From Macrostomum hystrix (Eukaryota; Animalia; Platyhelminthes): 64,000 nt of DNA. Shown here in pieces: positions 13,148 to 53,400 of the stretch. The stretch covers positions 930,001 to 994,000 of the forward strand of contig CATNEN010000032.1 in the NCBI GenBank assembly GCA_950097015.1. Reading direction: 5' to 3'. The notes beneath the pieces were generated by a model, which was not told the origin of the DNA, did no database searches, and was given only the letters and a program-made list of their open reading frames with translations. The stretch's first letter is position 1; each line of letters opens with the position of its first letter. The translations under genes and the position numbers were made by a program.

Positions 13148-15928
13148 CACAGTGCTCATGGGAAGTCAAAATGACACAAAAAATTGCCCAAGAAAATGAT
13201 TTTGTAAACCATATACCAGAGCACCTCGTATACCCAGAACAGGTTTTTTTTAAATCGTAAGTGCTTGTCCTAGCGTACAACAGACTTTTTATTTTGTTCG
13301 GCCAAAACAGGCTCTTAATTGCGACGTTGCTATGGGAAAAAACTTATTAAAATTGAATTAGTAAAAGCTTATGCATAGTAGTCTGTTTTAACAGCGTATT
13401 TTTTCAGAAAAAAATTGTCACTTATAACCTTAAAACATAAATGTGAGCTACACATGAAAGCCATTGTAAGCAACAACAGCTCGGAGCAGTTCGTTTGGGA
13501 AAGTGCTGTGCTGCATGGGCACAGCATATCGCTGCCATGTTAGAGCGAAATCCCGGTGCACGCTCTCGAAGGCTTGCTCGCTAAACGTGCCTAGTGGTCT
13601 CCCAGTGACGGCGCAGAATGTTCCCACGTGGTACAACAGCACATGCACTTTTGGGGAAATTGGCAAACCGATCAGCTCGTATGTGGCCTTGAACTGCGCG
13701 ATTCGGTCCTGGAAATCCGCGTGCAGTTCGGAGCCAAAGCAGCTGCTGACTACTGCATCAAAGCTCACCAGACAGGAGCCGTAGTGCTTCAGTTGCCGCG
13801 GCAGGCAATTCTGAAGCTCGGCAGATCGTCGAAGCAGAGTGCGACACGCGTTTCCCTCCATGCTGCCGCCGCGGTATCCTACACGCACAATGCTACGATC
13901 ATGCGCCCACTGATAAGCGCAGTTGTCACCCCACGCCGTGTTCAAAGCATCGAAAATGCGATTTGTGATGCCAAGCATCAGGTGCAGCTCTGGTGGAGGC
14001 AGAATGAAGAGAATTTCTGCGTCATCATCTGCCTGAAGCAGAGGAGCCTCGACGCAGTTGAAAAAATCCTTTGCAGTGTTTCGCACCTTGCCACTGCTGG
14101 CGAAATCCAGCGCCAGCTGCCGAATTCTGCCGATTGTCCGCACTGGACCGCAAGTGTCTAGCGGAACTGGAGTCTCGCAGTAGCAGCATGGATGCCTGGA
14201 CGCATGCGATTGCAGTCCACAGATGAGATTGGCAACTTTCATATCGGCGGCTACTGCATTCACTGTGATGCCTCCAAGGCTCAAGAGCTGGAAGAGTGCC
14301 TTTATATTGTCGTAAGACTCGGCCATGTCGGGCACAGCAGCAAGCAGCAGCAGCTTCTTGACTCCAGAATCGGCAAAAAATTTGTGCTTGGTCGACTGAT
14401 TTGGTTCGCTCTCACTTCGAGGTAGTAAGCTGACACAGATCTTGAAGAACTCGCCACCTCCGTCAAGTCCAAGCTTCACATCGATATTGTCGTGACCTCT
14501 TTCAAAAGCAACCTTTTCGATTAAGCCTTGAACATCATTGCAAACGACAGCAATTTTTGAACCTTCGCTATCCACTTTCAGCAGACTGTGCACAAAAAAT
14601 CTTCCAGATGCCGACTTCTTACTGCGAGACTCGCTCCCAAGTTCGATTGTACAGCCTTTACTGTGCCGGCTCCCATCCGCAAGATGCTAGCCGCTCGTAG
14701 AGTTTGCCTGTTGCTCAGATTGAGTGCGACTTTCAGTTGAAGCATCGTGGCTGTGGTCGCTTGAGCCAATTGTCCTGAGCTGCTGGCTGCTTCCACACAG
14801 TGACCCACAGTGACAGCCAGAGGCCTGCCTCCATGTGGTCTTTTCAAAGTCACTGTGCTAGATCCGGCTGCTTGCAGCTTGGCAGCGATTTCGGTGCTGG
14901 CCACTTGCTCTGTCGTTCCAGGGCTCAGCTGGGTGCTCAAGTTAATCAGCCGCGTCGCCTTGTTGCAGCGATGAGTCTTTCCTTTACCAATGGGCGAGTG
15001 GCAGCCAGAACACAGCCGTTCAGGAGTCTGAGGTGCATCGCCGCAAGATGATGGTCGGCCCCTCGTACAGTTTGGCGAACTAGTTGCATAGATACTGCAT
15101 GGATCTGAGTTTTTGTGCAGGTTGCTGCGAGCAATCCTGCAGATCTCACATGGGCAGTCGGGCTGTGATCTTCTGCTGACTGGGATGCTGCTCAAGTCTT
15201 TAAGCATTTGCTCGTAGAGAAGTCTTGGCGGCAAAGGACGAGGCGATGGGCCAGCTAGCGAAGACACGATTCGGCGACAGCCCTCACACACTCCAGCAGG
15301 AAGAAAATGCTGCACAGATGAGAAGTTTGGCAGGATGTAGTGCTCAATCGCTGCTGCATCGTTTACACAGCGCTCAGCCTTGCGTAGGCAAAGCAGGCAC
15401 ACACTACGAAGGCACTCATCGTGGCTCTTTGGGCTGTTGGGCATTTTTCTGAATTCGAATAGAACGTTTGAGCTATGCATAGATGCAAGGAACAATTTAT
15501 GTCACAGGACTGACAATATCAGACTTTATTTTCAAGTGAGGTGACTAGCCGCATATGTACAGTGCTTTCTACAACTTTGTACACTGCCATATCACATCTG
15601 TGATGCATCACACAAAAGTCATGATACAATCTCAGCAGTCAATATTTATTGTACTTTTTCCTGCCGTCCCTAATCAAAACTAAATACTCTGTGCATTGCA
15701 GGATCAGCATAAAATACTAAAAAGATGGGAATGCTTCATTTTTCGTTGCAACTTCACAATAAAGGACCTGTTTAAGCTGAATAAAATAAAAAGTCTGTTG
15801 TACGCTAGGACAAGCACTTACGATTAAAAAAACCTGTTCTGGGTATACGAGATGCTCTGGTATATGGTTTACAAAATCATTTTCTTGGGCAATTTTTTGT
15901 GTCATTTTGACTTCCCATGAGCACTGTG
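13148..15928 (-). mobile_element. Chapaev/Transib-related (RAG1-like) DNA transposon, 2781 bp
   Basis: TIRs of ~145 bp are near-identical (13148-~13294 and ~15785-15928) with ~45 bp of further degenerate similarity. Both begin CACAGTGCTCATGGGAAGTCAAAATGACACAAAAAAT. CGCGGC flanks both sides (13142-13147, 15929-15934). Contains the transposase ORFs. Confidence 0.92.
13448..15444 (-). CDS. Chapaev/RAG1-like DDE transposase, interrupted by one -1 frameshift at ~14594-14599
   Basis: N-terminal Chapa/RAG1-N-like zinc motifs: H-x7-CLLC, P-x3-CEGC, CPCEIC. Core motifs: KLGLDGGG (D), AADMK (D), HPCCYC, PELHLMLG, MEGNACRTLL (cf. RAG1 MNGNFARKLM), KVHVLLYH (H-x4-H), SEQAFESVH (E). One extra T in the T6 run would give an uninterrupted frame (EDFFVHSL). 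The start Met (15444 or 15480) is uncertain. Confidence 0.88.
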
Positions 15929-24283: not shown

Positions 24284-26320
24284 TGCAATGCCAATTGGGG
24301 ATTATTAATCAAGGCTGGAATATGATCAGAAAGGCTTGGAGAAGAAACTATGAAATACATACAATACTATTGATTTGAAGAAAAAAGAACAAAATATAGT
24401 AACAAAATATGAAAATAATTGAGAAGTTAAAACAAAGGACAAACTCAGAAATCAAAATGCTAAAAAATTATAATTATGTTAAAAGTATTCTGCATCTCTT
24501 TTGTTCTTTTGCATACATTATAACATTAACTTTACAGAGATTTGCCTAGGTAATATTTGTAGAACTTATGATGCCTGGATATATAAGAACTAAAGTATTT
24601 ATTATTTCATTGAACTGCAATGTACATTATCTTTCTGAGTTAAAATTAGTATGAAGTTTGCACTAGTTGCACTATTAACAGACAAGAAGCCTGATTGGTC
24701 AATACAGAATTTGAATTAAGATAAATAATATTATGATTTACTAAAATGTATATTTCAATTAAAAAAAATGCATTTTTTATCCATACATAGTTTACAAGTG
24801 TTGGCCTAACATAATGAATTTAAATTCGAAAAAAATATTTTGTTTGATTTTCTCATATCTGCTTTAGAGATTAAGGCAATATTCTAGTTTTTTACATTTA
24901 ATAAATTCATACAAGACAAAAATGTTGTTTTCAGTCAACAAACAACTAACAAAAAACCAAAAAGCCACTTGATGTCAGAGTGATATTTATATTTCAGATT
25001 ACATATTAGTGTGCCAACGAGAAAAACATACTCTGATTGCACTCCACTATCAGATTGAAGGGTTTAAGTTGTATAGATCCTCAGCATTGTAGGCCTGTAA
25101 CAAGAATGATAGTAGTCAGTGCCATAGGACATCTAGCCTGATTGCTAAGAATAATTAATCATCTAACTTTCTGTCTTTCCTACACCTATTATTTCTTTCT
25201 TAGGGTCTTGCCATAGACAAAACCATACACTGACATATCCACCACTACTTGGCAATAGACAGCAATGGCACATCATAAAAAACTTATGCAAATTATTTAC
25301 TTTGTTAAACCTTGAGAAAGTCATTACATTGGTTAAAATATTAATTTTGTTTTGCACAACTATTGGTTTATTTTCAAACACATGCAAAAGCCAATTTATA
25401 GATCTATATATTTATTGGCAATGCTTATCCCCATGGTACTGTAGAAATAATTTTTGTCTTATTCCTACGGTACCGTGGGAATAATTTCCTGCTTATCCGC
25501 ATGGCACACTGACGAGATAGCTGTCCTATCTTCAAAATATTCCGTGGGAATAATTTCCTGCTTATCCACATGGCACACTGATGAGATAGCTGTCCTATCA
25601 TCTATCTTTTTATCATGATTGCAATTTTCCTTTTTTCTTCTGGTTTTTAAAAGCAAGTAAACAAATTAAAGTTTTCTGCTTTTTTCACAAGTAGTTACCC
25701 AATACGGCGGTCCGTGGAAATGCCGAAACTGACGAAACGGGCCGAAACAAACCGAAACGGACCGAAACGGACCGAAACGGACCGAAACGGACCGAAACAA
25801 ACCGAAACGGACCGAAACGGACCGAAACAAACCGAAACGGACCGAAACGGACCGAAACAAACCGAAACGGACCAACTGGAACCTGAAAATGACAAAATTA
25901 TTGATCGAGGGCAAACTATGGCTGATTAAAGCATCCGCCGTGCAAAGTGAAGCAACATCGGTGTGAGGGAGTGCGATCAATAGCTACCGTACGTGCGATA
26001 TTAGGGTGTGTGTTTTCTGTATTTTGTAATGCCGTTGCAGTTGCATATATCGAGTCGTCATTGCCTTTGTGCTTAGAATAGAATTTCAACCCTTGCTTAT
26101 TGTATACTATTACGGGTCGTTTTAAAAGAAGCTTCAGTTTACATACCATACGCTTTTTCAAATCAATCGTGAGTTCTTTGTGCAACACTTTGTTTAAACT
26201 AACTTACAGGAGCAGTTAACAAATTAAACTTACAGTATTCGATTTTGGACCGCCACGTGCAGACTATCAAATCACCAAGCCACATTTCAATCAAGACGGT
26301 AAAGATCCTAGCAGTGTGCT

Positions 26321-29300
26321 ATGAGGATTCGGAGTCCTATGTACCCCTGCACTGGGTGTGGTCTTGAATGCGCTGACGATACAATCTATTGTTGTGGATG
26401 CCAGTGTTGGAGCCATCGAACATGTCTTGCAATGAGCGAAGTGTTGTTTGCTAAGTGGGATTCCTCAAATGCAGACTTCCTTTGTCCCACGTGTGTCCAC
26501 ATCAACGATGGAGGATATGACATTCAGGGTGCTCTCTCTAGGTGAGTAAATGCTGTAGTGTGGTCTTCATATTAAATTCACAAAATTCTATTGCTGCAGG
26601 GGCCTCGTGGCCTAATCACAGTGCTGTGCCCCACCAGATGTATATAAAATTATACATTTTGTCTATCTTAAGATTCTTCCCTTATGACTTATGCTAGTCC
26701 CTAGGCCTATGACTTGCATCTTGATTAGAATCAAATTGATGTTCTTTGTGGTAGTGCTAGAGAGAGTAGACCTTACAAATGGTGGGCTTTAGAGTTCTGC
26801 CATAGCTATGGATATGTCTATGAGAAGTTACAGATATGGATTTTTTCATAAAAGATATGGATATGGATAGGCTATGGGAAAATTAAGAGGTTATGGATAT
26901 AGATATGGATATGGGAAAATTTTAGTTATGGTGGAACTGAACTCTAGTGGGCTTCTTCATCAACAGTGATATAAAATGGTGGAAAGCATATTCTATAAAA
27001 ATAGAGAATGGGGTAAAAGTCATCAACCAAACAAGAAATCAATGATTTTATATATTCAACCTTTTATTAAACTTTCAGTATGCTTCATATCAAAGTGAAG
27101 CTAACCCAAAGTTGCAGAAAGTTAATATTTTTCTTTTGAAGAATATTGTTTTATCCAAAGCAGTTAATTAAGTTGAAAGAGGTAATAGACCACTTTCTAT
27201 CAAAACCAAGCAACAATTTTCATGCATTGTCAAGCTGAACAAAGAATCCGATGTTCTGTTTTTCATTTTGGCATAGTAAAGGCATCATAGAACTTGAAAT
27301 ATCATAACAAATGAATAAAATAGTTAGGAAGAATCACATGAAAGATAAATATGACTTTCATTTCTCTTGAATGGTTTGGTTGATGTTTTACCCTAAGGGC
27401 TTTTGATAAAAAAATGGGAAAAAAATATATACTGTACTTAGTAGTATAGTAGTAAGCAGTAAGTAGTTGCAAAGGAAAACTAAAACTTCAACTTCACTGT
27501 CATATGACATATTCAAGGAATTACTCATATCTGGATCATTTTTCTACATTCTCTTAATAGATTACATGCAATTCTAAATGTATCATAAAGCTCAGATTGA
27601 GAACTGCTACAGTCTGCTATAGTGCATGATAGAAATCTTGATAAACTTGTATAAAGCATTTCCAGTGGATTTTGCAAGTCAGCTAGCTCAAATTCAACAT
27701 AAAAGTTGCTACTTTCTTTTGTTTCAACAATTTCAGGCTACAGACTTCAGTGGCTATGTCTGCTAGTGAGCGCGAACAACTTCTGCTGGCGACATACTTT
27801 GTAGAACCACAACTTCAAGAGGTCATCTTTGGAAATGCTGGCACCGATAAGACTGGTACTGATGATATTGCCAAGAAGATTTTGCTGCTGTTCCAGCCAT
27901 GTGTACTCAATTTGTACCACCCTGCAGCTGTTGCTGGGGATGGCAACTGTTTTTATCGTGCAGCCTCCCTGGCTCTCTATGGCACACAGGAGCACCATCT
28001 GTACCTTCGTTTGCGAATTGGGCTAGAGTTGATTGACAACAGATCATTCTATGATTTGGAAGCAGCAAACTTTACTGATCTAATAAATGACTGTCGGATC
28101 TATACACCACCATTTCTAGATGTAATGATGAGTGCTGTTACTCCTGGCTCCTATGCAGAGATGATTCACTTCTTTGCACTGAGTGCTGCCATTGGTAAAG
28201 CGATTCAGTCATATCATCCACCAAATGCTCTTATTTCTTGTGACCAGCATCCATACACACGCCTTGTGTGTGGTCGTGGTGTCCGCCGTCCATGCAGTCC
28301 GGTAATCACATTAATGTGGTCTCACTTTTCGCACGTTCCAGCCAAGGCAACTGCACTCGTTGCGAACCATGTCATTCCACTCATACGAATAGTCGATGCA
28401 ACACATGAGTCACCAACAAGTGTTGAGATGGATGAGGAGGGGGCAGAGGACTATAGTGAGAACTCACGAGTTGACGACTCGAGGAATGATGGCGAAAAGG
28501 ATGGTGAAGTTGGGAGTGACGAAGGTGAGTCGCATGCGAGGAGGGCTGAAGAGAAGAATGCGCAGGAAAGTGAAGAGGCAGCGAATGACAATGGTGCTGG
28601 AGTGGGGGACAAGGACAAGACGCGTTCGCAGAAGTCAAAGAAGAAGAAAGGCACAAAGAGAGAGAATGAAGCTGCAGGCGATGATGCTGGGGTGGAGGAG
28701 AGTGGCGCTTCAAGTTCGCAGAAGTCAAAGAAGAAGAAAGGCACAAAGAGAGAGAATGAAGCTGCAGGCGATGATGCTGGGGTGGAGGAGAGTGGCGCTT
28801 CAAGTTCGCAGAAGTCAAAGAAGAAGAAAGGCACAAAGAGAGAGAATGAAGCTGCAGGCGATGATGCTGGGGTGGAGGAGAGTGGCGCTTCAAGTTCGCA
28901 GAAGTCAAAGAAGAAGAAAGGCACAAAGAGAGAGAATGAAGCTGCAGGCGATGATGCTGGGGTGGAGGAGAATGGCACTTCAAGTTCGCAGAAGTCAAAA
29001 AGAAAGAAGTACAAGGACACAAGAAGAAGAGCGGACGAATCAATGAGCACCGATGATGAGAAGCAATCCAATTCTGACTCAGATCCAAAGAATGCAAAGA
29101 GGAAGAATGATTACATCGCCGACGAGTCAAACCTGTTTACTGATTATGGAACTGATTCTAGTCTACCAGGAGGAAAATTCATGTCTGGCCAAAAAGTTTA
29201 TGAGGTTTTGACTACAACCGGGATAGAGAATGCCCTAAAATCAGTTCCGACTGGAAAAAAGGACAATGTATACTTCGTGGTTGACAACACTGACAATATA

Positions 29301-30962
29301 CAGCGTCGACTGGGTGGCAAGAAAAGCCTTTTTTGGGATGACTGTGGAGCGTGGGTCTCATCAAATTCGCCTACTATTAGAGTTCCATATTTATGTGCAA
29401 GTAATCGTCTTGGATCTCGATTGCATCGTAAAGAAGAAAAATACTGCACTGAATTTCAGTGCAGTAACAAACGCTACTATGTTCCACTATCTCCACAGCC
29501 ATTGAAGGAAGACGTTGTTACTTTTGTGCACCATTATTCAAGTTTGAAATTTGGCTCACAATCTGCTTCGAGCTATCGTCGCCGGATTACTTGGATTGAG
29601 AGTGCAGCACACTCAATTGCCATTTTTGAATACGCAGGTACATTCCCAGGACACAAGCAGCATGGGAACGATAGTGCAGAAGATTCACACTTCATTCGAA
29701 CACCAGAAGAAACTATACAGAAAATGAAGGAGATGCTGAAGTCGCTTCCACCTAGAGAAGTTTATGCTAAGTTAGTGAAGGACAATTTGGAAGAGAGTGA
29801 GAAGTCTCCTCGTAATCTTCAACAAGTAAGAGATGCAAATCGTAAAAATGCTTCGGGGCACAGGGTGCCATTCGCAAACCCTGCAGACGAGTGGTTGGCT
29901 GTCGTTGAAATGCTTCAAATGAATGAATTTGTACGACATGTAATTCACCCACATGGAAGGCCGCCTTGCGCTGTTCTGTACACAGATAAGCAACTGCGAG
30001 ACGTTAAAGAATTCTGCTGCGGTTCCAACGCAAGTGTACTGTCATTCGACAAAACATACAATCTGGGCTCTGTTTTTGTTACCCCTAGTTCGTATCAGAA
30101 CTTGGCTTTGTATCGCAAATCAACAGGAGATACCCCCATTTTTATGGGGCCAATCTTTTTACATGGCAATTCTGATGCCACGACATATAACTACTTCTTC
30201 AGCCATTTATCTTTGATGCTGGAACATTCACCTCAAAAGAAGATTATTCTTGGATCGGATGCTGAGCTGGGGATGCGTAAGGCAATGATGCATTCCTTTC
30301 CATACGCGTTTACAGTGGCATGTACAAAGCATTTGAAGGACAATGCCAAAAGGCAGCTATCAGACACATGTGGTGTTGATAAGTACGAACGAAAGAAAAT
30401 TATTTCACAAATTTTCGGTACACATGGACTTGCCAACTCTAATACAGTGACTGTTTTTGATGCTGCTGTGGCACAGCTTATACATGAAATGCGAAGTGCA
30501 ATCCCAGCATTTGCGAAATACTGTGCCTCACACGTGCTACCACTGTTGCGAGAAAGCATTGTCTGCGAGCGTCACTTGTGGACGACCAACAATGCTGAGT
30601 CGCTGAATCACGTTTTGAAGATGAAAATAAGTTGGACACCAAGAAACCTTCCTGACTTGATTTTTCGCTTGGAGGAGCTATCGAGGCAGCAGCATTTAGA
30701 AGCAGAAAGAGCTCTCATCGGCTTTGGCGAGTTTCGACTGTCCTGTATGTATGTACATCATCAAATCACTCTCGATGCTTGGAAGAAAATGTCAAAAAAA
30801 CAAAGAGATGCAGCTTTCCAAAAGTGCTTTCGAATGATTAAGGATGAAGGAGTGTTCACATCTACCAATGGCAGGTTCAAAACTATGAGGAAACCATCTG
30901 CTGGTAAGAAGCCCCACCAGAAGCGACGACAGAAGGCAGAGCGAGCGACTCAGTTTCGATAA
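26321..30962 (+). CDS. PHD finger - OTU-like cysteine protease - MULE DDE transposase fusion, ~1148 aa, 2 exons
   Basis: Exon 26321-26541 (C4HC3: CTGC..CCGC-x4-HRTC..CPTC) ends at GTGAGT, phase 2. The acceptor TTTCAG leads into exon 27737-30962 in matching phase. OTU-like GDGNCFYRAASLALYG and distal NH. MULE motifs: LSFDKTYNL (D), LGSDAE (D), CTKH (CxxH), WTTNNAESLN (E). No internal stops. Confidence 0.9.
28625..29000 (+). repeat. Coding 90-bp repeat x4 (SQKSKKKKGTKRENEAAGDDAGVEESGASS) inside the MULE transposase
   Basis: Period of 90 nt measured between TTCGCAGAAGTC at 28625 and 28715; frame-preserving. Confidence 0.93.
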
Positions 30963-32709
30963 ATGTGTCAGCTAATTTGACAATGACAGGAATAAGTGCA
31001 GCGCTGCATTTCTAGCTATATATTTGTGTGCTTAGTTCGAATATTCGTTTTTATCCCGATAGAAATCCCATGCACATGCCAGTGCCAGTGACCATCACAG
31101 TCTAAACCATATGACCATTTTTATAGACAGCGACGGTAATCCTACGACTGACTATCTAGTGTGCTTTGTATTTCCAATTATTGTTCATTTACTTACCCCT
31201 GCCTAACCATATTTCTACTGCACCAGCCACTTTTTGTTTACCATCTCATATGCAACTGTCTGACTGTTACAGTAAGTACATATAGGAATTTTTAAGTGTG
31301 CAAATAATTTTTTTGCCAGCTGTGTTTCCTACTATACATGTACTACTTACTAGCTGTATGATGCTGTCGTGGAAAGCTGTTTGCATTTGCATTTTATTTT
31401 ATCCTGCTTATTATGAATGTGATGTACTTCACATAAGGACCATTAGTCTTCAACTGCAACCTCAACTTCTATTTCATGCTAAACAACGTCTACCAGCCCA
31501 CCAGTGTCAACATGTTTTTTTGCTAAAGATGAATTTCAAAGCATTGGGCCAACATGATTCCAAACCACCCTTGCATTCATGCACTGTATCTTAAGTCCAT
31601 CAATTCAGATTCCCTTGCTGAGTGAACGGAGTCAAGTATAGTAAAACGCTAATTGATTACTTTACTGAGTAAGAAGTAAAGATTTTAGCTGCTGCAATTT
31701 AAGAGAGAGAGAGAGAGAGAAGTGCACAAGCACCGGAGCCTATCGGTTCTGGGTGGGCTATTCCCCTGGGTGGCTGCCACATTGAGAAGCACCTGACATT
31801 CTCTCAATAGCTTCATGGAAATTAATTTCTTCCTTTGGGATAAGTTTCCCAACCTACCTTACTTTCGTTCTGATTATTTTTGTATTGCTATCTGCTGCTT
31901 TTAGTTGTCGATTTTGCCTGACATTTCCTGCTGAAGAAACGCGTGAAAGATTTTTTACCATCTTTTGGATCGTCAGTTTTGCTTTATATACTGTAAGTCT
32001 TGCTGTCGGGTCGCACACTTTATTTTGCACCGCTGGCTTCCATGTGTACATTTTGGCGCTCACTGCATTTTTACATTATTCTTGCTTATAAGTTTTGCTT
32101 TTTCTGCTGTCGTTCTGCTGCTTTTAATCAATTTTTGCTATTCTCACTTGACTTGCCGATTTGTGCCGCTTTTAAATTGTGCCAGTAACGTTTTGTCAGC
32201 CCAACGGAATTGACTTTATAGATTCGTACTACCTGTCAGTGTCTTCACCTCGCTTTTATCAACCACAACCAAATTTATCAACCACATTGACTTTTATGTC
32301 TATGAAAGATGCTTTTTGCAAAAAAGGTTTTTGTTTGCCTTTTTCTTACCATCTCTTTGAGTCTCTTTGACTTGCTGAAATTAAACTGCTCTTAACTAAA
32401 CCGTTTTTCGAAAAAAACTTTCAATAATTTTATCTTACATTTTTTCGTTCCAAATTATTTTTAAAACGTATATCGGAGCGCAATGAGTAAAATCGATTAA
32501 CTACAGTATAAACATTCTATTACATGTACTTCAGCATCGTTGAAATTCTAGTGGAGTCGACCTTCGGCGGTATATAAATTTTCATCAATTCAGATACATG
32601 TATAGTTACTGCAAGCCTTGTGCCTTCGTGTTTTGAATTCGATTATGCTGTAAGATAGGCTTGTGCGGCCAATTCGCTACAGAGTATTAGCAATTCAATG
32701 CGCGCAATG

Positions 32710-33352
32710 TTAATGTACTACGAGTACAACAATGTTTGGCTCTAGTTCGGATTTGATAGTTTCAAGAAGGTCATCGGCAAGAGAAGAGAAAGCGTTTGGG
32801 TAGTAGTCGACCAGACAGCGATCATTGACAAAGGATGTGGAGGTAAGACCCGAGGTGTTGATGGGCACTAGACCAAGTGGGCTTGGAGCGGCAGAAACAG
32901 CTTCCCCACTCACTACTCTCAAGATTGCCGGTACCGGTGCCAGAAGTTGAAGGCGAGGTCGGAGGAGTCGCAAATTCAGGTCTCGCGCCGTCGGCTCCAA
33001 CGGTACTGTCAGCCGAAGCGATGTCGGTGTCTATCTCGATCGGGGAGTCGTCTCGGAGGGTCGTCTCGGCGGTCTCAGCAGACTCGGCCGGGTGCTCAAC
33101 GATCTTCTCGTGACCGGAGTCGCTTGCACAGTTGGAATCGCTGGGACGGCCGGGGATCGAGGATCGCCCTGGTACGGCCTTAGGCTTCTTGGCGGCCGCT
33201 GCTGCTGCCGACTCTAGACTGGCACGGGAGTTCGACGGCCGCTGGCGCTTGGATGAAGTGGCTGGAGGGCCGGGGATGAGCTCTGCACCTGGCTTCTTCG
33301 ACGCCGATGCCGCTGAAGACCTGGCCGGAGGTCGACTGCCGTTGCTGCTCAT
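32710..33352 (-). pseudogene. Frameshifted S/A/P-rich ORF inside the MULE; possibly a retroelement ORF1 fragment or captured host sequence
   Basis: ATG at 33352 opens 176 aa, and an overlapping frame continues to 32710. No recognisable domain. A GA-rich upstream block lies at 33500-33830 and an (AG)n tract at ~31701-31718. Confidence 0.3.
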
Positions 33353-36168
33353 GCCCGAGCGAGATTTGCTAATGTGGAGACTTTCTATTCTATGCTTGCT
33401 ATGTAAATATGTTATAATAATAAAATAAATAAATGTAAAAGTTGCTATTTACCGTCAAAATAGACAGAAAGACTAAAGTCTAAGTGCAATGAAAGCTATT
33501 TGGTGTCTAAAGTTCACTATGACTAGCTAAGCTAAGCTAAGGGACACAGTGAGCCTGCTAGCGCAGGGAGGGGGAGGTGCCAACCGACAGACAACAGGTG
33601 AGTACACGCCTAGCCGGGGGGAACCGGGCGCTCACTCACAAGCTGAGAGACGGAAGGCAGATGGAAAGGATCTAGGCAGGTGAGAAAGGGGCGATCGGCA
33701 CTGCCAGTGGAAAGGGTAGTAAAGCTATAGCTGGCGTGCGCACGTGGCGGCAAAGCGGAGAAAGCGAAATAGGCAAAAGGCACGGCCGGGGCGCGAAAGC
33801 TGGACTGGACAAGGGAGGCAAGCTTATACCAACAAGCTTAGCTTATAGCAAGCTTATACCAAAGGGATGAAGCGATGAATTTTCTTGCGATAGAATTGGC
33901 TCGTATATATAGCACGGGGGAGTGAGGTTGCTGCACAAAGATGTTACGAGGTTTAAACGTAAAACCCGGAAATTTACACCGGAAAATAGTTACATGAATA
34001 GCTAGAAGAAATACCTATATCATATGCTTTATGCTGAAAATGTACACCAATTTCCGCCTAATTGATGCACATTTTCAGCATTAAGCATAGAGAATACTTT
34101 CATAAGAAACCCCCCAGGAGTCAGCGGAATGGGCAGAATTGCCTCCCCGCTGGCTGTGGGACGATGACGCCAAACGTGCTGCGCCAGTGAGCCCACTGCC
34201 CTCCTGCAATTATTGTTATTATTCGCCCCCCCCCGACTTTGTTAATCAGGCTTCAGTTCCCAGTCCCCAATCAGGCGCGAGTTTGAAAGGGAAAAAATCC
34301 GACATCAACATCAGGTACACGTTACATATATGCATATAGATTCTGAAGTTAAGTCTCCCGATTCGTCCATTTCGGTTGGTTTCGGTCCGTTTCGGTCCGC
34401 TTTGGTTGGTTTCGGTTCGTTTCGGTCCGTTTCGGTTCGTTTCGGTCCGTTTCGGTCCGTTTCGGCCCGTTTCGGTTCGTTTCGGTCCGTTTCGGTCCGT
34501 TTCGGCCCGTTTCGGTCCGTTTCGTCCGTTTCGGCATTTCCACGGACCCCCCAATACGGTGGCTTTTTGAGGTATATAAAATATATATTTCTATTATTTA
34601 TATATTTAAAAGAATACAACTGAAGTGTGTATTTTTCTAATCTTATAGCTCAAGCCTTTTAAGTCTATAATCCCACGGAATATGTTGAAGATAGGACAGC
34701 TATCTCGTCAGTGTGCCATGCGGATAAGCAGGAAATTATTCCAACGGAATATGTTGAAGATAGGACAGCTATCTCGTCAGTGTGCCATGCCAATAAGCAG
34801 GAAATTATTCCCACGGTACCGTAGGAATAAGACAAAAATTATTTCTATGGTACCGTGGGGATAAGCACTGCCATATTTATTATTTATATAATAAATAGGT
34901 ATTTTACCACACAGGGGTATATTCCTACATACATCAAGATAGGATCCTACATCAAGATAGACTAAAAAATATAATGATCAAGTTAGCAGAAACAAAGCTA
35001 AAAGCCAACCAATGAAGCACAAAAATACAGACAACATATACAAAAGACATTTTAGCTGCTTCCAATCAATTACAAAAATAATTTTATAAAAAAATCTGCA
35101 CTTTACAAAAATCTCAATTGGATGGTAAAGCATATAAGTTCTAAATCTGCTAAGCTTATTGACATATAGAAATATGCTCTGAAAACAAAATAATTAATTT
35201 ACTATTTTTCTAATGCCTTTTAGTACATCGAAAATGACTAACACGCATGAGGATGTTTAGTTATTTTCACTGGTGGCTAGCTTGGCTATTATGTGTGATA
35301 TAGCTTTTGAGGTATTTAGCTATTACAAAAGTGCACACCAAATTTGGTGTATCTTTGTTATCACGCTCAAAGTGCACAGTGCATCAATGTTGATCGTAAT
35401 AACAATTCATCGGACAGACAGGATCATTTGAACTTGACGCCAAAAAAATTTAAAGTTGAAAATTTTAACTTGATCCTAACAAAATGTAACCTTTATGAGG
35501 TTTTAAAAGTATTTTTTATAAACTTGCTTTTAATTTCCGTAACAGATATGCAAACTTGTAGCGTTTTTAGCTACTTTTTAAGCGTTAAATTGAAGCTTAA
35601 AATTTAGAAATTTGTTTCCTCGAAACATTTGGTAAAAATCAGGAATAAAAAAATGTTTTTGGTTCTGAACTACTGGTAGGCCTATTATAAATTTCTCACA
35701 TAACAGCAGTGCTTTTAAGTTTAAAGTCAATCTAAAATAATGGTTTCAAGTAAAAATTATGTTATGCCTCTGTAGCAGCTTTAACGTTAAATAATTGACT
35801 ATGTATTTGAATTCGACTATGTAAATGAACACGTTTTTAATTGAAATCCGTCAAAGTATGTTATCAAATATAGTTTGCCTATGCCTTGTTGTTCTTTGAC
35901 TATTTGATACTTGTAGTATAGCTATAAAATTTAACTATCAAGTGAAATAGCACTTCAACATCTCTTAAAATAGTCTTAGCTTTCCCTCTGTTGAACTTAG
36001 GCCTAGCTTGTAATTTATTTGCTTTTTACTTCTTGAGCAAAAACTGTTTTTGCCTGAGACAATATCTTCAGCCCAAATCACATGCTTTAATTTGATACAT
36101 TTGATACTTTTTCCAGTGATTCCTTGTGTATTTGATGGACCTTGATAGACAAAATGAATATAGGTTAA

Positions 36169-50400: not shown

Positions 50401-53400
50401 TGAGTTTGCTTCTCAGCCAATTCCCCCCATGAAATTTCCCACTGTTGAATCCGCTTGTGCCACCCACAGTGAGCATGCACATTTCTGTCCGCTTTTGTTT
50501 CCTGTATTTCTGGCGTCACTTCCTACTATACTAGTTTCCCCTCAGTCCTTCCCAATATGGCTCTTTCCCCATCTCCCAATCCTTCTTCCCTCCCACGCGC
50601 GCCTGTCGCTAAGATTTAGCGTAAATCTCGTCTCACACATGCCGTTAATCCAAATCTGGCGTTAAATGCTTGAAATAAATGAGCCCAACGCCTCAGTCCC
50701 ACTCAAACGCAGGCGTATGCGTTGGATAAGTTTGTGGTCGGGGCTGAGGCCGTGCTGTGCTAACTGTTGCTAGCGGATATTAATCCTGACGCTTTGAGCC
50801 AACAGAAAAAATGCTAGCGGATGAAAAGAGAGAGATAGACGAGCCGAACCGAATGGGATCAGGACTTAGAAAGGTGACTCAGTGCACGACTGAGAGACAT
50901 GGGTTTACACGCTAAAGGGATTGCAGGGCATTGCTGCTGCTGCTGCTTCCGCAGTTGTGCCAATATGTTAATCTATCTAGAATTTCGTGTTTGGATTAGA
51001 TAATATTTATCAGTATCTAATGTCAATATCTACTTTTTATCAAGGTTTCCTGTTGAAATCAGTTTAAACGTTCAAAAACTTTCTTTAATGTTGATATTTT
51101 TCTTTGCATGCAGTGGGATTTTTAAGGTCGAATATTATGTTTAGAATATGATTTTTATGTCAGGAATGATGGTAAGAATGGGATTTTAATGTCAGGGATG
51201 ATGGCAAGAATGGGATTTTATTGTCAGGAATGGTGGCAAGAATGGGATTTCAATGTCAGGAATGGTGGCAAGAATGGGATTTTATTGTCATGGATGGTGG
51301 CGAGAATGGGATTTCAATGTCAGGGATGATGGCAAGAATGGGATTTCAATGTCAGGAATGGTGTCAAGAATGGGATTTCAATGTCAGGGATGATGGCAAG
51401 AATGGGATTTCAATGTCAGGAATGGTGGCAAGAATGGGATTTCAATGTCAGGGATGATGGCAAGAATGGGATTTCAATGTCAGGAATGGTGTCAAGAATG
51501 GGATTTCAATGTCAGGGATGGTGGCAAGAATGGGATTTCAATGTCAGGGATGATGGCAAGAATGGGATTTCAATGTCAGGGATGATGGCAAGAATGGGAT
51601 TTCAATGTCAGGGATGATGGCAAGAATTGGATTTCAATGTCAGGGATGATGGCAAGAATGGGATTTCAATGTCAGGGATGGTGGCAAGAATGGGATTTCA
51701 ATGTCAGGGATGGTGGCAAGAATGGGATTTCAATGTCAGGAATGGTGGCAAGAATGGGATTTTATTGTCAGGGATGATAGCAACAATGGGATTTTAATGT
51801 CAGTGATGATGGCAAGAATGGGATTTCAATGTCAGGGATGATAGCAACAATGGGATTTCAATGTCAGGGATGATGGCAAGAATGGGATTTCAATGTCAGG
51901 GATGGTGGCAAGAATGGGATTTCAATGTCAGGAATGGTGGCAAGAATGGGATTTCAATGTCAGGAATGGTGGCAAGAATGGTATTTTATTGTCAGGGATG
52001 ATGGCAAGAATGGGATTTCAATGTCAGGGATGATGGCAAGAATGGGATTTCAATGTCAGGGATGATGGCAAGAATTGGATTTCAATGTCAGGGATGATGG
52101 CAAGAATGGGATTTCAATGTCAGGGATGGTGGCAAGAATGGGATTTCAATGTCAGGAATGGTGGCAAGAATGGGATTTTATTGTCAGGGATGATAGCAAC
52201 AATGGGATTTTAATGTCAGTGATGATGGCAAGAATGGGATTTCAATGTCAGGGATGATAGCAACAATGGGATTTCAATGTCAGGGATGATGGCAAGAATG
52301 GGATTTCAATGTCAGGGATGGTGGCAAGAATGGGATTTCAATGTCAGGAATGGTGGCAAGAATGGGATTTCAATGTCAGGAATGGTGGCAAGAATGGTAT
52401 TTTATTGTCAGGAATGGTGGCAAGAATGGGATTTCAATGTCAGGGATGATGGCAAGAATGGGATTTTATTGTCAGGGATGATAGCAACAATGGGATTTCA
52501 ATGTCAGGGATGATGGCAAGAATGAGATTTCAATGTCAGGGATGGTGGCAAGAATGGGATTTCAATGTCAGGAATGGTGGCAAGAATGGTATTTTATTGT
52601 CAGGAATGGTGGCAAGAATGGGATTTCAATGTCAGGGATGATGGCAACAATGGGATTTCAATGTCAGGGATGATGGCAAGAATGGGATTTCAATGTCAGG
52701 GATGATAGAAACAATGGGATTTCAATGTCAGGAATGGTGGCAAGAATGGGATTTCAATGTCAGGAATGGTGGCAAGAATGGTATTTTATTGTCAGGAATG
52801 GTGGCAAGAATGGGATTTCAATGTCAGGGATGATAGCAACAATGGGATTTCAATGTCAGGGATGATGGCAAGAATGGGATTTCAATGTCAGGGATGATGG
52901 CAACAATGGGATTTCAATGTCAGGGATGATGGCAAGAATGGGATTTCAATGTCAGGGATGGTGGCAAGAATGGGATTTCAATGTCAGGAATGGTGGCAAG
53001 AATGGGATTTCAATGTCAGGGATGATGGCAAGAATGGGATTTTATTGTCAGGGATGATAGCAACAATGGGATTTCAATGTCAGGGATGATGGCAAGAATG
53101 GGATTTCAATGTCAGGGATGGTGGCAAGAATTGGATTTCAATGTCAGGAATGGTGGCAAGAATGGTATTTTATTGTCAGGAATGGTGGCAAGAATGGGAT
53201 TTCAATGTCAGGGATGATGGCAACAATGGGATTTCAATGTCAGGGATGATGGCAAGAATGGGATTTCAATGTCAGGGATGGTGGCAAGAATGGGATTTCA
53301 ATGTCAGGAATGGTGGCAAGAATGGGATTTCAATGTCAGGGATGATGGCAAGAATGGGATTTTAATTGACCGCTATTTGAACAAAAATCCAACCTTGGCG

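What the first reader, a model, noticed from the sequence alone, without database searches (positions are those of the whole stretch)
26321..30962. Mutator transposase fused to a PHD finger and an OTU-like protease: a possible self-contained anti-silencing module
A phase-matched GT-AG intron joins a C4HC3 PHD exon to a long exon carrying an OTU-like catalytic signature (GDGNC…H) and an intact MULE DDE core. Known: some Mutators carry Ulp1 proteases, and vertebrate vertnin is an OTU-like, transposon-derived protein. Inference: a histone reader, a putative deubiquitinase and a transposase in one polypeptide could target or de-repress chromatin, for example by removing ubiquitin marks. This lineage may also relate to the origin of vertnin. 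The ORF is uninterrupted, so the element may be active.
Basis: partly seen in the sequence, partly recalled or inferred. Interest (0 to 1): 0.8.

Follow-up and report, generated by a model that had tools for sequence, protein, structure and literature searches.

The report
Mutator transposon carrying PHD and OTU
This is a complete, apparently intact 8.8-kb Mutator-like jumping gene whose transposase also carries a chromatin-reader-type zinc finger and a ubiquitin-protease-type domain; the layout recurs in amphioxus and in environmental DNA, but I found no paper describing it.

Summary
Exon 1 (26321-26541) encodes a C4HC3 PHD finger. A GT-AG intron in matching phase leads to a 1070-codon open frame (27750-30962). 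That frame holds an OTU protease domain, a repetitive charged linker, a beta-rich domain that may bind DNA, and an intact Mutator-type DDE core.

New here: the element's ends. It spans 25708-34549, with about 180-nt terminal inverted repeats made of 10-bp units and a perfect 10-bp target duplication. It sits nested inside a separate, roughly 600-bp MITE-like element.

The OTU fold is recovered, and its Cys67 and His207 are invariant in 45 relatives. The usual third triad residue, two after the His, is absent.

No RNA run was found, so the splice junction rests on homology: relatives encode PHD, OTU and transposase in one unbroken frame.

The architecture is not rare. A profile search found 4655 related OTU domains, and 15 of 33 long hits carry a Mutator domain.

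Mutator elements with Ulp1 and PHD, and OTU in Helitrons and Ginger1, are published. I found no paper on OTU in Mutator.

The vertnin link has fold-level support only. The anti-silencing idea is untested.

The scan noted an apparent second copy elsewhere in this genome (s1-405154).

The parts
25698..25707 (.). Left target-site duplication, CCCAATACGG
   Evidence: Identical 10-mer at 34550-34559, directly outside both TIR ends
25708..25883 (+). Left terminal inverted repeat: terminus CGGTCCGTGGAAATGCCGAAAC, then about 15 copies of a 10-bp unit (CCGAAACGGA or CCGAAACAAA)
   Evidence: Inverted-repeat pairs; tandem repeat of period 10; 88% identity to the right arm; the same (C/G)GGTCC terminus in the related element L004
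26321..26541 (+). Exon 1: start codon and C4HC3 PHD finger (73 codons plus 2 nt)
   Evidence: family profile hits solved PHD fingers; homologous N-termini in P0042, P0112 and P0040
26542..27736 (+). Intron, 1195 nt, GTGAGT...TTTCAG. If it were retained, a TGA at 26543-26545 would end the frame
   Evidence: Not seen in RNA; inferred from phase and homology
27737..30962 (+). Exon 2: OTU domain, charged linker, beta-rich pre-DDE domain, DDE transposase, stop codon
27867..28394 (+). OTU-like cysteine protease domain (ORF residues about 40-215). Cys67 is at 27948-27950 and His207 at 28368-28370
   Evidence: Invariant G65, C67, E93, W190 and H207 in 45 sequences; profile hit to OTUD1 at 9e-10; model pLDDT 88.6 with top 50 Foldseek hits all OTU deubiquitinases; Atlas features
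28624..29004 (+). In-frame 90-bp tandem repeat, 4.2 copies at 98% identity, encoding a 30-residue acidic/basic unit with KSKKKKGTKR (looks like a nuclear localisation signal)
   Evidence: The NLS reading is inference
29157..29699 (+). Conserved beta-rich domain ahead of the DDE core (ORF residues 470-650; motifs KxNVYFxVDN and DDCGAW). Tentatively a WRKY/GCM1-like DNA-binding domain
   Evidence: Alignment A9; model pLDDT 92.5; VIA-align hits to GCM-DNA Z 7.0, NAC 6.5, WRKY33 5.8, WRKY1 4.2 and AFT2 3.7, with SSR4 top at 7.8; no Foldseek or PDB sequence match
29967..30629 (+). Mutator-type DDE catalytic core: D767 (30048-30050), D837 (30258-30260), C858-x2-H861, E950 (30597-30599)
   Evidence: homologues at E down to 7e-134, several above the Pfam MULE cut-off
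30963..34361 (.). 3.4-kb internal region after the stop codon, content unknown. Includes a 176-codon low-complexity frame on the minus strand (32822-33352)
   Evidence: no Pfam match
34362..34549 (-). Right terminal inverted repeat (the reverse complement starts GGGTCCGTGGAAATGCCGAAAC)
34550..34559 (.). Right target-site duplication, CCCAATACGG
25416..25697 (.). Left half of a separate MITE-like host element, split by the Mutator insertion
   Evidence: 187-nt inverted repeat 25416-25602 / 34687-34873 at 94%; 7-bp TATTTAT on both outer flanks
34560..34873 (.). Right half of the same MITE-like host element

Best explanation
What it is. This is an autonomous Mutator-like (MULE) cut-and-paste DNA transposon of 8,842 bp (25708-34549). 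It has roughly 180-nt terminal inverted repeats built from 10-bp units and a perfect 10-bp target-site duplication, and it inserted into an older MITE-like element.

What it encodes. Its single two-exon gene gives a protein of about 1,148 residues. In order, the domains are: a PHD finger, an OTU-type cysteine protease, a disordered charged linker with lysine-rich motifs, a beta-rich domain that may be WRKY/GCM1-like, a DDE (RNase H-like) catalytic core with the Mutator CxxH motif, and a basic tail.

Shown: the anatomy, the domain identities, the conservation of the catalytic residues, and the recurrence of this architecture in other animals.

Inferred mechanism:
- The beta-rich domain binds the 10-bp subterminal repeats, and the DDE core excises and reinserts the element, producing 10-bp duplications.
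- The PHD finger is of the Pygopus/BPTF type, with the conserved Y-P-C and W-x-H aromatic residues. It would tether the transposase to histone H3 tails, probably at active chromatin, much as the RAG2 PHD finger does for RAG.
- The OTU domain would act as a ubiquitin or ubiquitin-like isopeptidase. In the same transposase clade a Ulp1 (SUMO-type) protease occupies the same N-terminal slot, so the shared job is most likely deconjugation of ubiquitin-like modifiers. That could protect the transposase itself, or strip marks from chromatin or repair proteins at the transposition site.

My odds: identity and anatomy about 0.9. OTU being an active Ub/Ubl isopeptidase about 0.55. PHD guiding targeting about 0.4. 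The confidence figure given for this explanation is for the statement as a whole.
For: Ends:
- Inverted repeats.
- 10/10 TSD CCCAATACGG.
- The related element L004 has the same (C/G)GGTCC termini, subterminal repeats and an 11-bp TSD.

Transposase:
- Homologues at E 7e-134 to 5e-53, named 'MULE transposase domain-containing' in Pinctada.
- Pfam MULE above its cut-off in relatives.
- D/D/CxxH/E invariant or nearly so.

OTU:
-.

PHD:
-.

One polypeptide:
- P0004 runs from the PHD tail into the OTU region without a break.
- P0042, P0112 and P0040 hold PHD + OTU + MULE in one frame.

Recurrence:
- 4655 profile hits. Of 33 long hits, 29 carry OTU, 15 MULE and 3 PHD. They include Branchiostoma floridae RefSeq proteins.

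Protease swap:
- Ulp1 in P0012 and P0013 at the same N-terminal position.
- These two form a small clade nested among OTU-bearing members.

Published precedent:
- Ulp1 and PHD in Mutator transposases, and OTU in Ginger1 and Helitrons (PMC2836005).
Against: - No transcript evidence for the junction or for expression.
- An in-frame ATG at 27756 could give an OTU-transposase protein without the PHD finger.
- For this copy, every Pfam hit is below its curated cut-off.
- The classical third OTU triad residue (Asp/Asn at His+2) is absent (A-N-H207-V-I), and the alternative residue was not identified.
- The fold match for the DNA-binding domain is middling (Z 7.0, in a range the tool calls common).
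- No activity, histone binding or transposition was tested.
- The TIR arms are only about 88% alike, and only one copy was examined directly.
Confidence: 0.7

Rival explanations
1. One reading: the PHD-OTU pair is an anti-silencing module. PHD would read silenced or marked chromatin at the element, and OTU would remove histone ubiquitin (or a related mark) to de-repress it.
For: - PHD and OTU are both real and conserved.
- OTU and Ulp1 alternate in the same slot, which fits interference with Ub/SUMO-dependent host control.
- From general knowledge, SUMO and ubiquitin pathways take part in transposon silencing.
Against: - No data here bear on silencing.
- The closest solved PHD fingers (Pygopus, DIDO1, BPTF, PHF2, MLL PHD3) read H3K4 methylation, which marks active rather than silenced chromatin.
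- The only published suggestion I found is a role in transposition or repair (PMC2836005).
Confidence: 0.2
2. The OTU domain is a self-processing protease, as in some RNA-virus polyproteins. It would cut the precursor to release the transposase from the PHD-OTU part.
For: - OTU and papain-like domains process viral polyproteins (general knowledge); viral OTU domains are among the fold matches.
- A long disordered linker separates OTU from the transposase.
Against: - No conserved Gly-Gly-like cleavage motif was noticed in the highly variable linker.
- Replacement by Ulp1 in sister elements points to deconjugation of ubiquitin-like modifiers rather than a sequence-specific self-cut.
Confidence: 0.12
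3. The OTU domain is catalytically dead and serves only as a ubiquitin-binding or scaffolding module, as proposed for vertnin.
For: - The canonical His+2 Asp/Asn is missing.
- Vertnin, a close structural neighbour, is reported to be inactive.
Against: - Cys67 and His207 are invariant, and Asp64 and Asn66 nearly invariant, across 45 diverged family members.
- Several active OTU enzymes place the third residue elsewhere (general knowledge, for example A20).
Confidence: 0.12
4. It is not a mobile element but a domesticated host gene derived from a Mutator transposase.
For: Intact long frame. Branchiostoma relatives are annotated as ordinary, uncharacterised genes.
Against: - The gene is bracketed by matching TIRs and a perfect 10-bp TSD.
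- It is nested in another repeat.
- A second copy was noted in the same genome (unchecked).
- The DDE residues are intact.
Confidence: 0.04
5. The PHD exon belongs to a separate small transcript, or is not used. The transposase would start at the ATG at 27756.
For: No RNA evidence for the junction. There is an in-frame ATG three codons into the long frame.
Against: - Consensus donor and acceptor in matching phase.
- Several relatives have the PHD finger, the bridging segment (...YDFxxALxRL...ExLLLxTY...) and OTU in one frame.
Confidence: 0.1

Closest known systems
Mutator-like elements encoding a Ulp1 (C48) protease, some with a PHD finger (hydra, lancelet, Arabidopsis KI-MULE/VANDAL, melon, rice, maize; Bao et al. 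2010, PMC2836005, and references therein)
   Same: - Mutator DDE transposase with an accessory ubiquitin-like-specific cysteine protease and a PHD finger, long TIRs and a 9-11-bp TSD.
- Two members of this very transposase clade (P0012, P0013) carry Ulp1 in the same N-terminal slot.
   Different: Here the protease is OTU (clan CA, C85-type fold), not Ulp1 (clan CE). I found no paper reporting OTU in Mutator elements. Repbase itself could not be searched.
OTU domains in other transposons: Ginger1 transposases and animal Helitron/Helentron proteins (PMC2836005; PMC6431247)
   Same: An OTU-like cysteine protease fused to the element's main enzyme. OTU and Ulp1 also alternate among Ginger1 families.
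   Different: - The transposition enzymes differ: a Gypsy-integrase-like DDE, or Rep/helicase.
- In Ginger1 the OTU domain is C-terminal; here it is N-terminal.
Vertnin (VRTN), a vertebrate inactive OTU homologue with transposase-type HTH domains (PMC10318531; PMC3024977)
   Same: - The predicted OTU-like fold, including the N-terminal helical extension: TM 0.70, 188 residues aligned, rmsd 3.2 Å. This ties with the best OTU cluster and is above the generic OTU clusters at 0.55-0.59.
- With OTU-annotated clusters left out, vertnin clusters are the top named ones by language-model features, at score 0.80, which is a lead only.
   Different: - Vertnin is reported to lack catalytic residues, whereas this family keeps Cys and His.
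- Vertnin has HTH_Tnp_1/HTH_23 domains and no MULE DDE; this protein has neither HTH hit.
- A sequence-level comparison could not be run.
Rehavkus (a PHD-finger-bearing group within or next to Mutator; PMC6446971)
   Same: PHD finger in the transposase, long TIRs, short tandem repeats near the ends, 9-bp-class TSD.
   Different: - The 10-bp arrays lie inside both TIRs rather than as a minisatellite before the 3' TIR only.
- No OTU domain is described for Rehavkus.
- No Rehavkus reference sequence was available for comparison.
RAG2 PHD finger with the RAG1 recombinase (functional analogy only)
   Same: A PHD finger attached to a DDE transposase-type machine could steer it to H3K4-methylated chromatin. 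RAG2 PHD appears as a weak profile hit (E 0.04).
   Different: Different transposase superfamily, and separate polypeptides in RAG. Histone binding by this PHD finger is untested.

Membership tests
Mutator/MULE superfamily | DDE catalytic triad with the C/D-x2-H motif after the second Asp | tested here: met
   D767, D837, C858-x2-H861 and E950 are present and invariant or nearly invariant in 16 homologues
Mutator/MULE superfamily | Target-site duplication of 8-11 bp (PMC6446971) | tested here: met
   Perfect 10-bp CCCAATACGG on both sides; 11 bp in the related element L004
Mutator/MULE superfamily | Long terminal inverted repeats (tens to hundreds of bp) | tested here: met
   About 176-188 nt, 88% identity
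Mutator/MULE superfamily | Match to the Pfam MULE (PF10551) or Transposase_mut (PF00872) models at the curated cut-off | tested here: inconclusive
   This copy scores 16.5 and 19 bits, below the cut-offs of 27.6 and 21. Close homologues pass: P0002 32.3, P0006 30.1 and 24.0, P0042 32.9, P0044 29.4
Mutator/MULE superfamily | WRKY/GCM1-type zinc DNA-binding domain ahead of the DDE core (PMC1702500) | tested here: inconclusive
   Confident model (pLDDT 92.5). GCM Z 7.0, NAC 6.5, WRKY 5.8/4.2/3.9 and AFT2 3.7 are among the top hits, but the Z range is one the tool calls common, and Foldseek finds nothing
OTU cysteine proteases (Pfam PF02338; MEROPS C85-like) | OTU fold | tested here: met
   All of the top 50 Foldseek PDB matches are OTU deubiquitinases (OTUD3 E 7.6e-7, TM 0.75 by target). 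Profile hits to OTUD1 at 9e-10, OTUD7B and OTUD5
OTU cysteine proteases (Pfam PF02338; MEROPS C85-like) | Catalytic Cys in the D-G-N-C motif and catalytic His in the last strand | tested here: met
   C67 and H207 are invariant, D64 and N66 nearly invariant, in 45 sequences
OTU cysteine proteases (Pfam PF02338; MEROPS C85-like) | Third triad residue (Asp/Asn, classically two residues after the His) | tested here: not met
   The sequence is A-N-H207-V-I-P and the family consensus is P-N-H-F-V. An alternative residue elsewhere (as in A20-type OTUs) could not be assigned, because the model coordinates are not readable
OTU cysteine proteases (Pfam PF02338; MEROPS C85-like) | Pfam gathering score | tested here: inconclusive
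   This copy scores 16.7 bits against 23.3. Relatives pass: P0107 35.0, P0112 31.7, and a best E of 8e-28 among 33
OTU cysteine proteases (Pfam PF02338; MEROPS C85-like) | Isopeptidase activity on ubiquitin or ubiquitin-like conjugates | not testable with these tools
   Needs an enzyme assay
PHD finger | C4HC3 ligand pattern with canonical spacing and Trp two residues before the His | tested here: met
   C10, C13, C24, C27, H32, C35, C55, C58 and W30. C24, C27, W30, H32, C35, C55 and C58 are invariant in 5 family members
PHD finger | Significant similarity to known PHD fingers | tested here: met
   Family profile against PDB: Pygopus 1.2e-8, DIDO1 2e-6, MLL PHD3 4e-4. Pfam on the single sequence is below its cut-off (16 against 24)
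PHD finger | Binding to histone H3 tails | not testable with these tools
   Needs peptide arrays or ITC
Vertnin family | HTH_Tnp_1/HTH_23 and Vertnin_mid domains; loss of OTU catalytic residues | tested here: not met
   No HTH hit in this protein, and the catalytic Cys and His are retained. Only the OTU-like fold is shared. It is not a member of the vertnin family
Ulp1-encoding MULEs (KI-MULE type) | Peptidase_C48 domain | tested here: not met
   No C48 hit here. C48 is present in clade members P0012 and P0013
Rehavkus | Sequence relatedness of the transposase to Rehavkus references; minisatellite before the 3' TIR | not tested
   No reference sequence could be obtained. The short-repeat arrays here lie in both TIRs

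The most novel reading that the evidence does not exclude
The OTU module carried by this Mutator clade belongs to a transposon-borne OTU lineage, one that has moved between transposon superfamilies and has been swapped with Ulp1. That lineage would be the source of the catalytically dead OTU-like domain of vertebrate vertnin. If so, vertnin is a domesticated transposon protein whose protease ancestor was active.
Probability: 0.3. Interest if true: 0.6.

Novelty: new variant of a known kind. Interest (0 to 1): 0.4.

Why it matters
Transposons that carry their own ubiquitin-like-modifier proteases are known, but nobody has shown what the protease does. This family offers a clean test system:
- an apparently intact element with defined ends;
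- a conserved Cys/His pair to mutate;
- a PHD finger of a reader type;
- sister elements in which Ulp1 replaces OTU in the same position.

The OTU/Ulp1 swap argues that the selected function is deconjugation of ubiquitin-like modifiers as such. That makes it possible to test whether the purpose is self-protection of the transposase, chromatin access or repair.

The fold-level closeness to vertnin also gives a concrete lead on the origin of a vertebrate developmental regulator.

Against this, both accessory domains are already described in other transposons, and the architecture is common in sequence databases. A specialist would find it useful rather than startling.

Tried and rejected
- My first reading took the outer 187-nt inverted repeat (25416-25602 / 34687-34873), with its 7-bp TATTTAT flanks, as the element's ends. 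I rejected this once the inner TIRs turned out to be flanked by a perfect 10-bp duplication and to share their (C/G)GGTCC terminus with the related element in L004. The outer repeat is a separate host element.
- RNA support: the run search found no RNA holder. Three runs of unknown kind held about 0.75 of the words, which matches the share expected for spliced RNA. When laid, they proved to be fragmentary, DNA-like contigs that run across the donor into the intron. This gives no evidence either way on splicing.
- A word-index search with the OTU part (residues 1-225) found nothing at E <= 0.01. The exhaustive profile search was needed.
- A word-index search with the 33-protein alignment, run in the hope of pulling in vertnin and named relatives, returned only 4 close proteins.
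- Vertnin sequence comparison: no tool returned a vertnin sequence, and I did not type one from memory.
- Contigs for P0136 and P0180 had no DNA available. In L003 the gene lies at a contig end, so no ends could be read there.
- The 3' internal frames (31298-31594, 31965-32213, 32710-33000, 32822-33352, 33132-33428) have no Pfam match.
- The pre-DDE domain has no match by PDB sequence profile or by Foldseek.
- A whole-window repeat scan found no further copy of the element in the window.

Full report
**The observation**

The window holds a 1070-codon open frame at 27750-30962 (+) and, upstream, a 74-codon frame at 26321-26545 (+). The upstream frame ends in AG|GTGAGT, so the exon ends at 26541. 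The long frame is preceded by a pyrimidine tract and tttcag|G, so the exon starts at 27737. Exon 1 is 221 nt. Its last two bases plus G27737 make an Arg codon, and the frame runs on (L-Q-T-S-V-A-M...).

I did not build or search the joined protein. By arithmetic the joined product would be 74 + 4 + 1070 = 1148 residues.

**Domain identities**

On the single sequence, every Pfam hit is below its curated cut-off:
- PHD: 16 bits against a cut-off of 24.
- OTU: 16.7 against 23.3.
- MULE: 16.5 against 27.6.
- Transposase_mut: 19 against 21.

NCBIfam IS256 scores E 1.4e-4. Taken alone these would be weak, so I tested each domain through its family.

*Transposase.* The C-terminal 600 residues find 19 proteins at E 7e-134 to 5e-53 and 27-41% identity. 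One is named 'MULE transposase domain-containing' in Pinctada, and several pass the Pfam MULE cut-off. In a 16-sequence alignment, D837, C858, H861 and E950 are invariant and D767 is nearly so. This is the Mutator DDE signature with its CxxH motif.

*OTU.* An alignment of 45 family members has G65, C67, E93, W190 and H207 invariant, and D64 and N66 nearly invariant. Its profile hits the solved OTU domains of OTUD1 (9e-10), OTUD7B, OTUD5, OTUD3, A20 and viral OTUs. The AlphaFold model (pLDDT 88.6) returns only OTU deubiquitinases in its top 50 Foldseek matches, and language-model features agree. One caveat: the classical third triad residue, two positions after the His, is Ile here (A-N-H-V-I), and I could not assign an alternative.

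*PHD.* The ligand pattern is C4HC3, with Trp two residues before the His. A 5-member profile hits the Pygopus PHD finger at 1.2e-8, then DIDO1, MLL PHD3, PHF2 and BPTF. All of these are readers of the H3 tail.

*Linker.* A 90-bp unit repeated 4.2 times at 98% identity encodes an acidic/basic 30-mer containing KSKKKKGTKR.

*Pre-DDE domain.* A conserved domain (residues 470-650; motifs KxNVYFxVDN and DDCGAW) lies between the linker and the DDE core. It folds confidently (pLDDT 92.5) into a beta-rich structure. Foldseek finds nothing for it. The exhaustive aligner places GCM bound to DNA (Z 7.0), NAC (6.5), WRKY33 (5.8), WRKY1 and AFT2 among the top hits, with SSR4 first at 7.8. This fits the published WRKY/GCM1-type DNA-binding domains of MULEs (PMC1702500). 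The Z values are in a range the tool itself calls common, so I treat this as tentative.

**Is it one protein?**

No RNA run holding the stretch was found. Three runs of unknown type held about 0.75 of the sampled words. When laid, they gave short, DNA-like contigs that cross the donor site into the intron, with no joints. The junction is therefore unconfirmed in RNA.

Homology supports it:
- P0004, from Tara Oceans metagenome contigs, starts inside the PHD finger. It aligns to exon 1 residues 38-74 (38% identity) and continues without a break into the segment homologous to the start of exon 2.
- P0042, P0112 and P0040 hold a complete PHD finger, the same bridging segment, OTU and MULE in a single frame.

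**The element**

I first took a 187-nt inverted repeat (25416-25602 / 34687-34873, 94%) with 7-bp TATTTAT flanks to be the ends. That was wrong.

A second, inner pair of inverted repeats starts at 25708 and ends at 34549. Each consists of the terminus (C/G)GGTCCGTGGAAATGCCGAAAC followed by about 15 copies of a 10-bp unit. This pair is flanked directly by a perfect 10-bp duplication, CCCAATACGG.

A related element around P0006 (locus L004) has the same (C/G)GGTCC termini, 19-bp subterminal repeats and an 11-bp duplication.

The Mutator element is therefore 25708-34549 (8,842 bp). It inserted into a separate MITE-like element of about 600 bp. A 10-bp TSD and TIRs of about 180 nt meet the Mutator definition (PMC6446971).

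The 3.4 kb between the stop codon and the right TIR has no recognisable gene.

**How common is the architecture?**

A profile of the OTU part, run against 1.84 billion cluster representatives, gave 4655 hits at E <= 1e-3 and 258 at E <= 1e-30. Of 33 long hits, 29 score for OTU, 15 for MULE and 3 for PHD.

Named members are 'uncharacterized' RefSeq proteins of Branchiostoma floridae, of a B. floridae x B. belcheri hybrid, and of Dreissena polymorpha. The best Branchiostoma match is 35-38% identical across both OTU and transposase.

In the same transposase clade, P0012 and P0013 carry a Ulp1 (C48) protease at the N-terminus instead of OTU. On a tree of the DNA-binding plus DDE part of 31 members, these two form one small, well-supported clade nested among OTU-bearing members. 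The caveats are midpoint rooting, a quick search, and one long-branch row (P0063) of doubtful placement. Rows labelled 'none' may simply be incomplete gene calls.

**Literature**

Bao, Kapitonov and Jurka 2010 (PMC2836005) report three things:
- Ulp1 in Mutator elements of hydra, lancelet and plants.
- An alignment of Ulp1 and PHD domains from Ginger1 and Mutator transposases.
- OTU in Ginger1 and in Helitrons.

They propose a role for the ubiquitin pathway in transposition or repair.

Surveys of MULE diversity (PMC6446971; PMC13359780; bioRxiv 2021.09.26.461848) do not mention OTU. Four searches found no paper reporting OTU in a Mutator element. Repbase Reports are not in the searchable library, so prior cataloguing there cannot be excluded.

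**Vertnin**

Vertnin is published as an inactive OTU homologue (PMC10318531). It was earlier noted to contain a transposase-type HTH (PMC3024977).

In a shape search of ESM Atlas representatives, a vertnin cluster matched the OTU model at TM 0.70 (188 residues, rmsd 3.2 Å, query residues 12-220). This equals the best OTU cluster (0.71) and exceeds the generic OTU clusters (0.55-0.59). With OTU-annotated clusters excluded, the three best named clusters by features were all vertnin, at 0.80, a score the tool calls a lead only. That second result may only reflect vertnin being an OTU-like family outside PF02338.

No vertnin sequence could be obtained from a tool, so no alignment, E-value or tree exists. 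Vertnin's HTH domains are absent here. At most the OTU module is shared.

**Mechanism**

Shown: the anatomy, the domain families, the conserved catalytic residues, and the recurrence.

Inferred:
- The beta-rich domain recognises the 10-bp arrays.
- The DDE core cuts and pastes the element.
- The PHD finger tethers the protein to H3 tails, most likely at active chromatin given its nearest solved relatives.
- The OTU domain removes ubiquitin or a ubiquitin-like modifier.

The OTU/Ulp1 alternation in one slot is the best clue. It favours deconjugation in trans, or self-protection of the transposase, over a sequence-specific self-cleavage.

**Other points**

- The scan has a note of what looks like another copy on another piece of this genome (s1-405154). 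It also has notes of OTU fused to pogo and Helitron proteins in this genome. I could not check any of these.

**Verdict**

This is a real, well-formed and possibly active Mutator element with a PHD-OTU front end. It is a new variant of a known kind rather than a new kind. Its moderate interest comes from the protease swap and the vertnin lead.

Noticed in passing
window 25416-25697 and 34560-34873: A MITE-like element of about 600 bp, with 187-nt inverted repeats (94%), internal 34-bp repeats and 7-bp TATTTAT flanks. The Mutator insertion splits it in the middle. Its family was not identified.
   Followed up: partly
window 30963-34361 (especially 32710-33352, minus strand): 3.4 kb of the element after the stop codon has no recognisable gene. 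A 176-codon Ser/Ala/Pro-rich frame and an overlapping 96-codon frame on the minus strand have no Pfam match. This could be a second gene, captured host sequence, or filler.
   Followed up: partly
window 28624-29004: A 90-bp coding tandem repeat (4.2 copies, 98% identical) in the linker, which suggests a recent in-frame expansion of a lysine-rich motif.
   Followed up: partly
P0005 (1474 aa, 181 member sequences): A relative carries four tandem copies of the pre-DDE 'DDCGxW' domain before a single DDE core. This is an unusual multiplication of the putative DNA-binding module.
   Followed up: no
window 29702-29967: A run guessed to be RNA, from a differently labelled organism (X10, organism D), holds a 267-nt contig identical to this part of the transposase. 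This could reflect expression, contamination or a close relative.
   Followed up: no
window about 51000-53300: A long satellite array of 32-bp units (68 or more registered copies, 87-90% alike).
   Followed up: no
window 13148-15928: A 103-nt inverted repeat at 99% identity brackets the Chapaev-type element already reported by the scan (s1-268086).
   Followed up: no
L004 9842-14901: A related 5.1-kb Mutator element around P0006, with 103-nt TIRs, 19-bp subterminal repeats (AAATACCGGAAAGCAACC), the same (C/G)GGTCC termini and an 11-bp TSD, CTGTTAAGTGG. No protease domain was detected in its called protein.
   Followed up: partly
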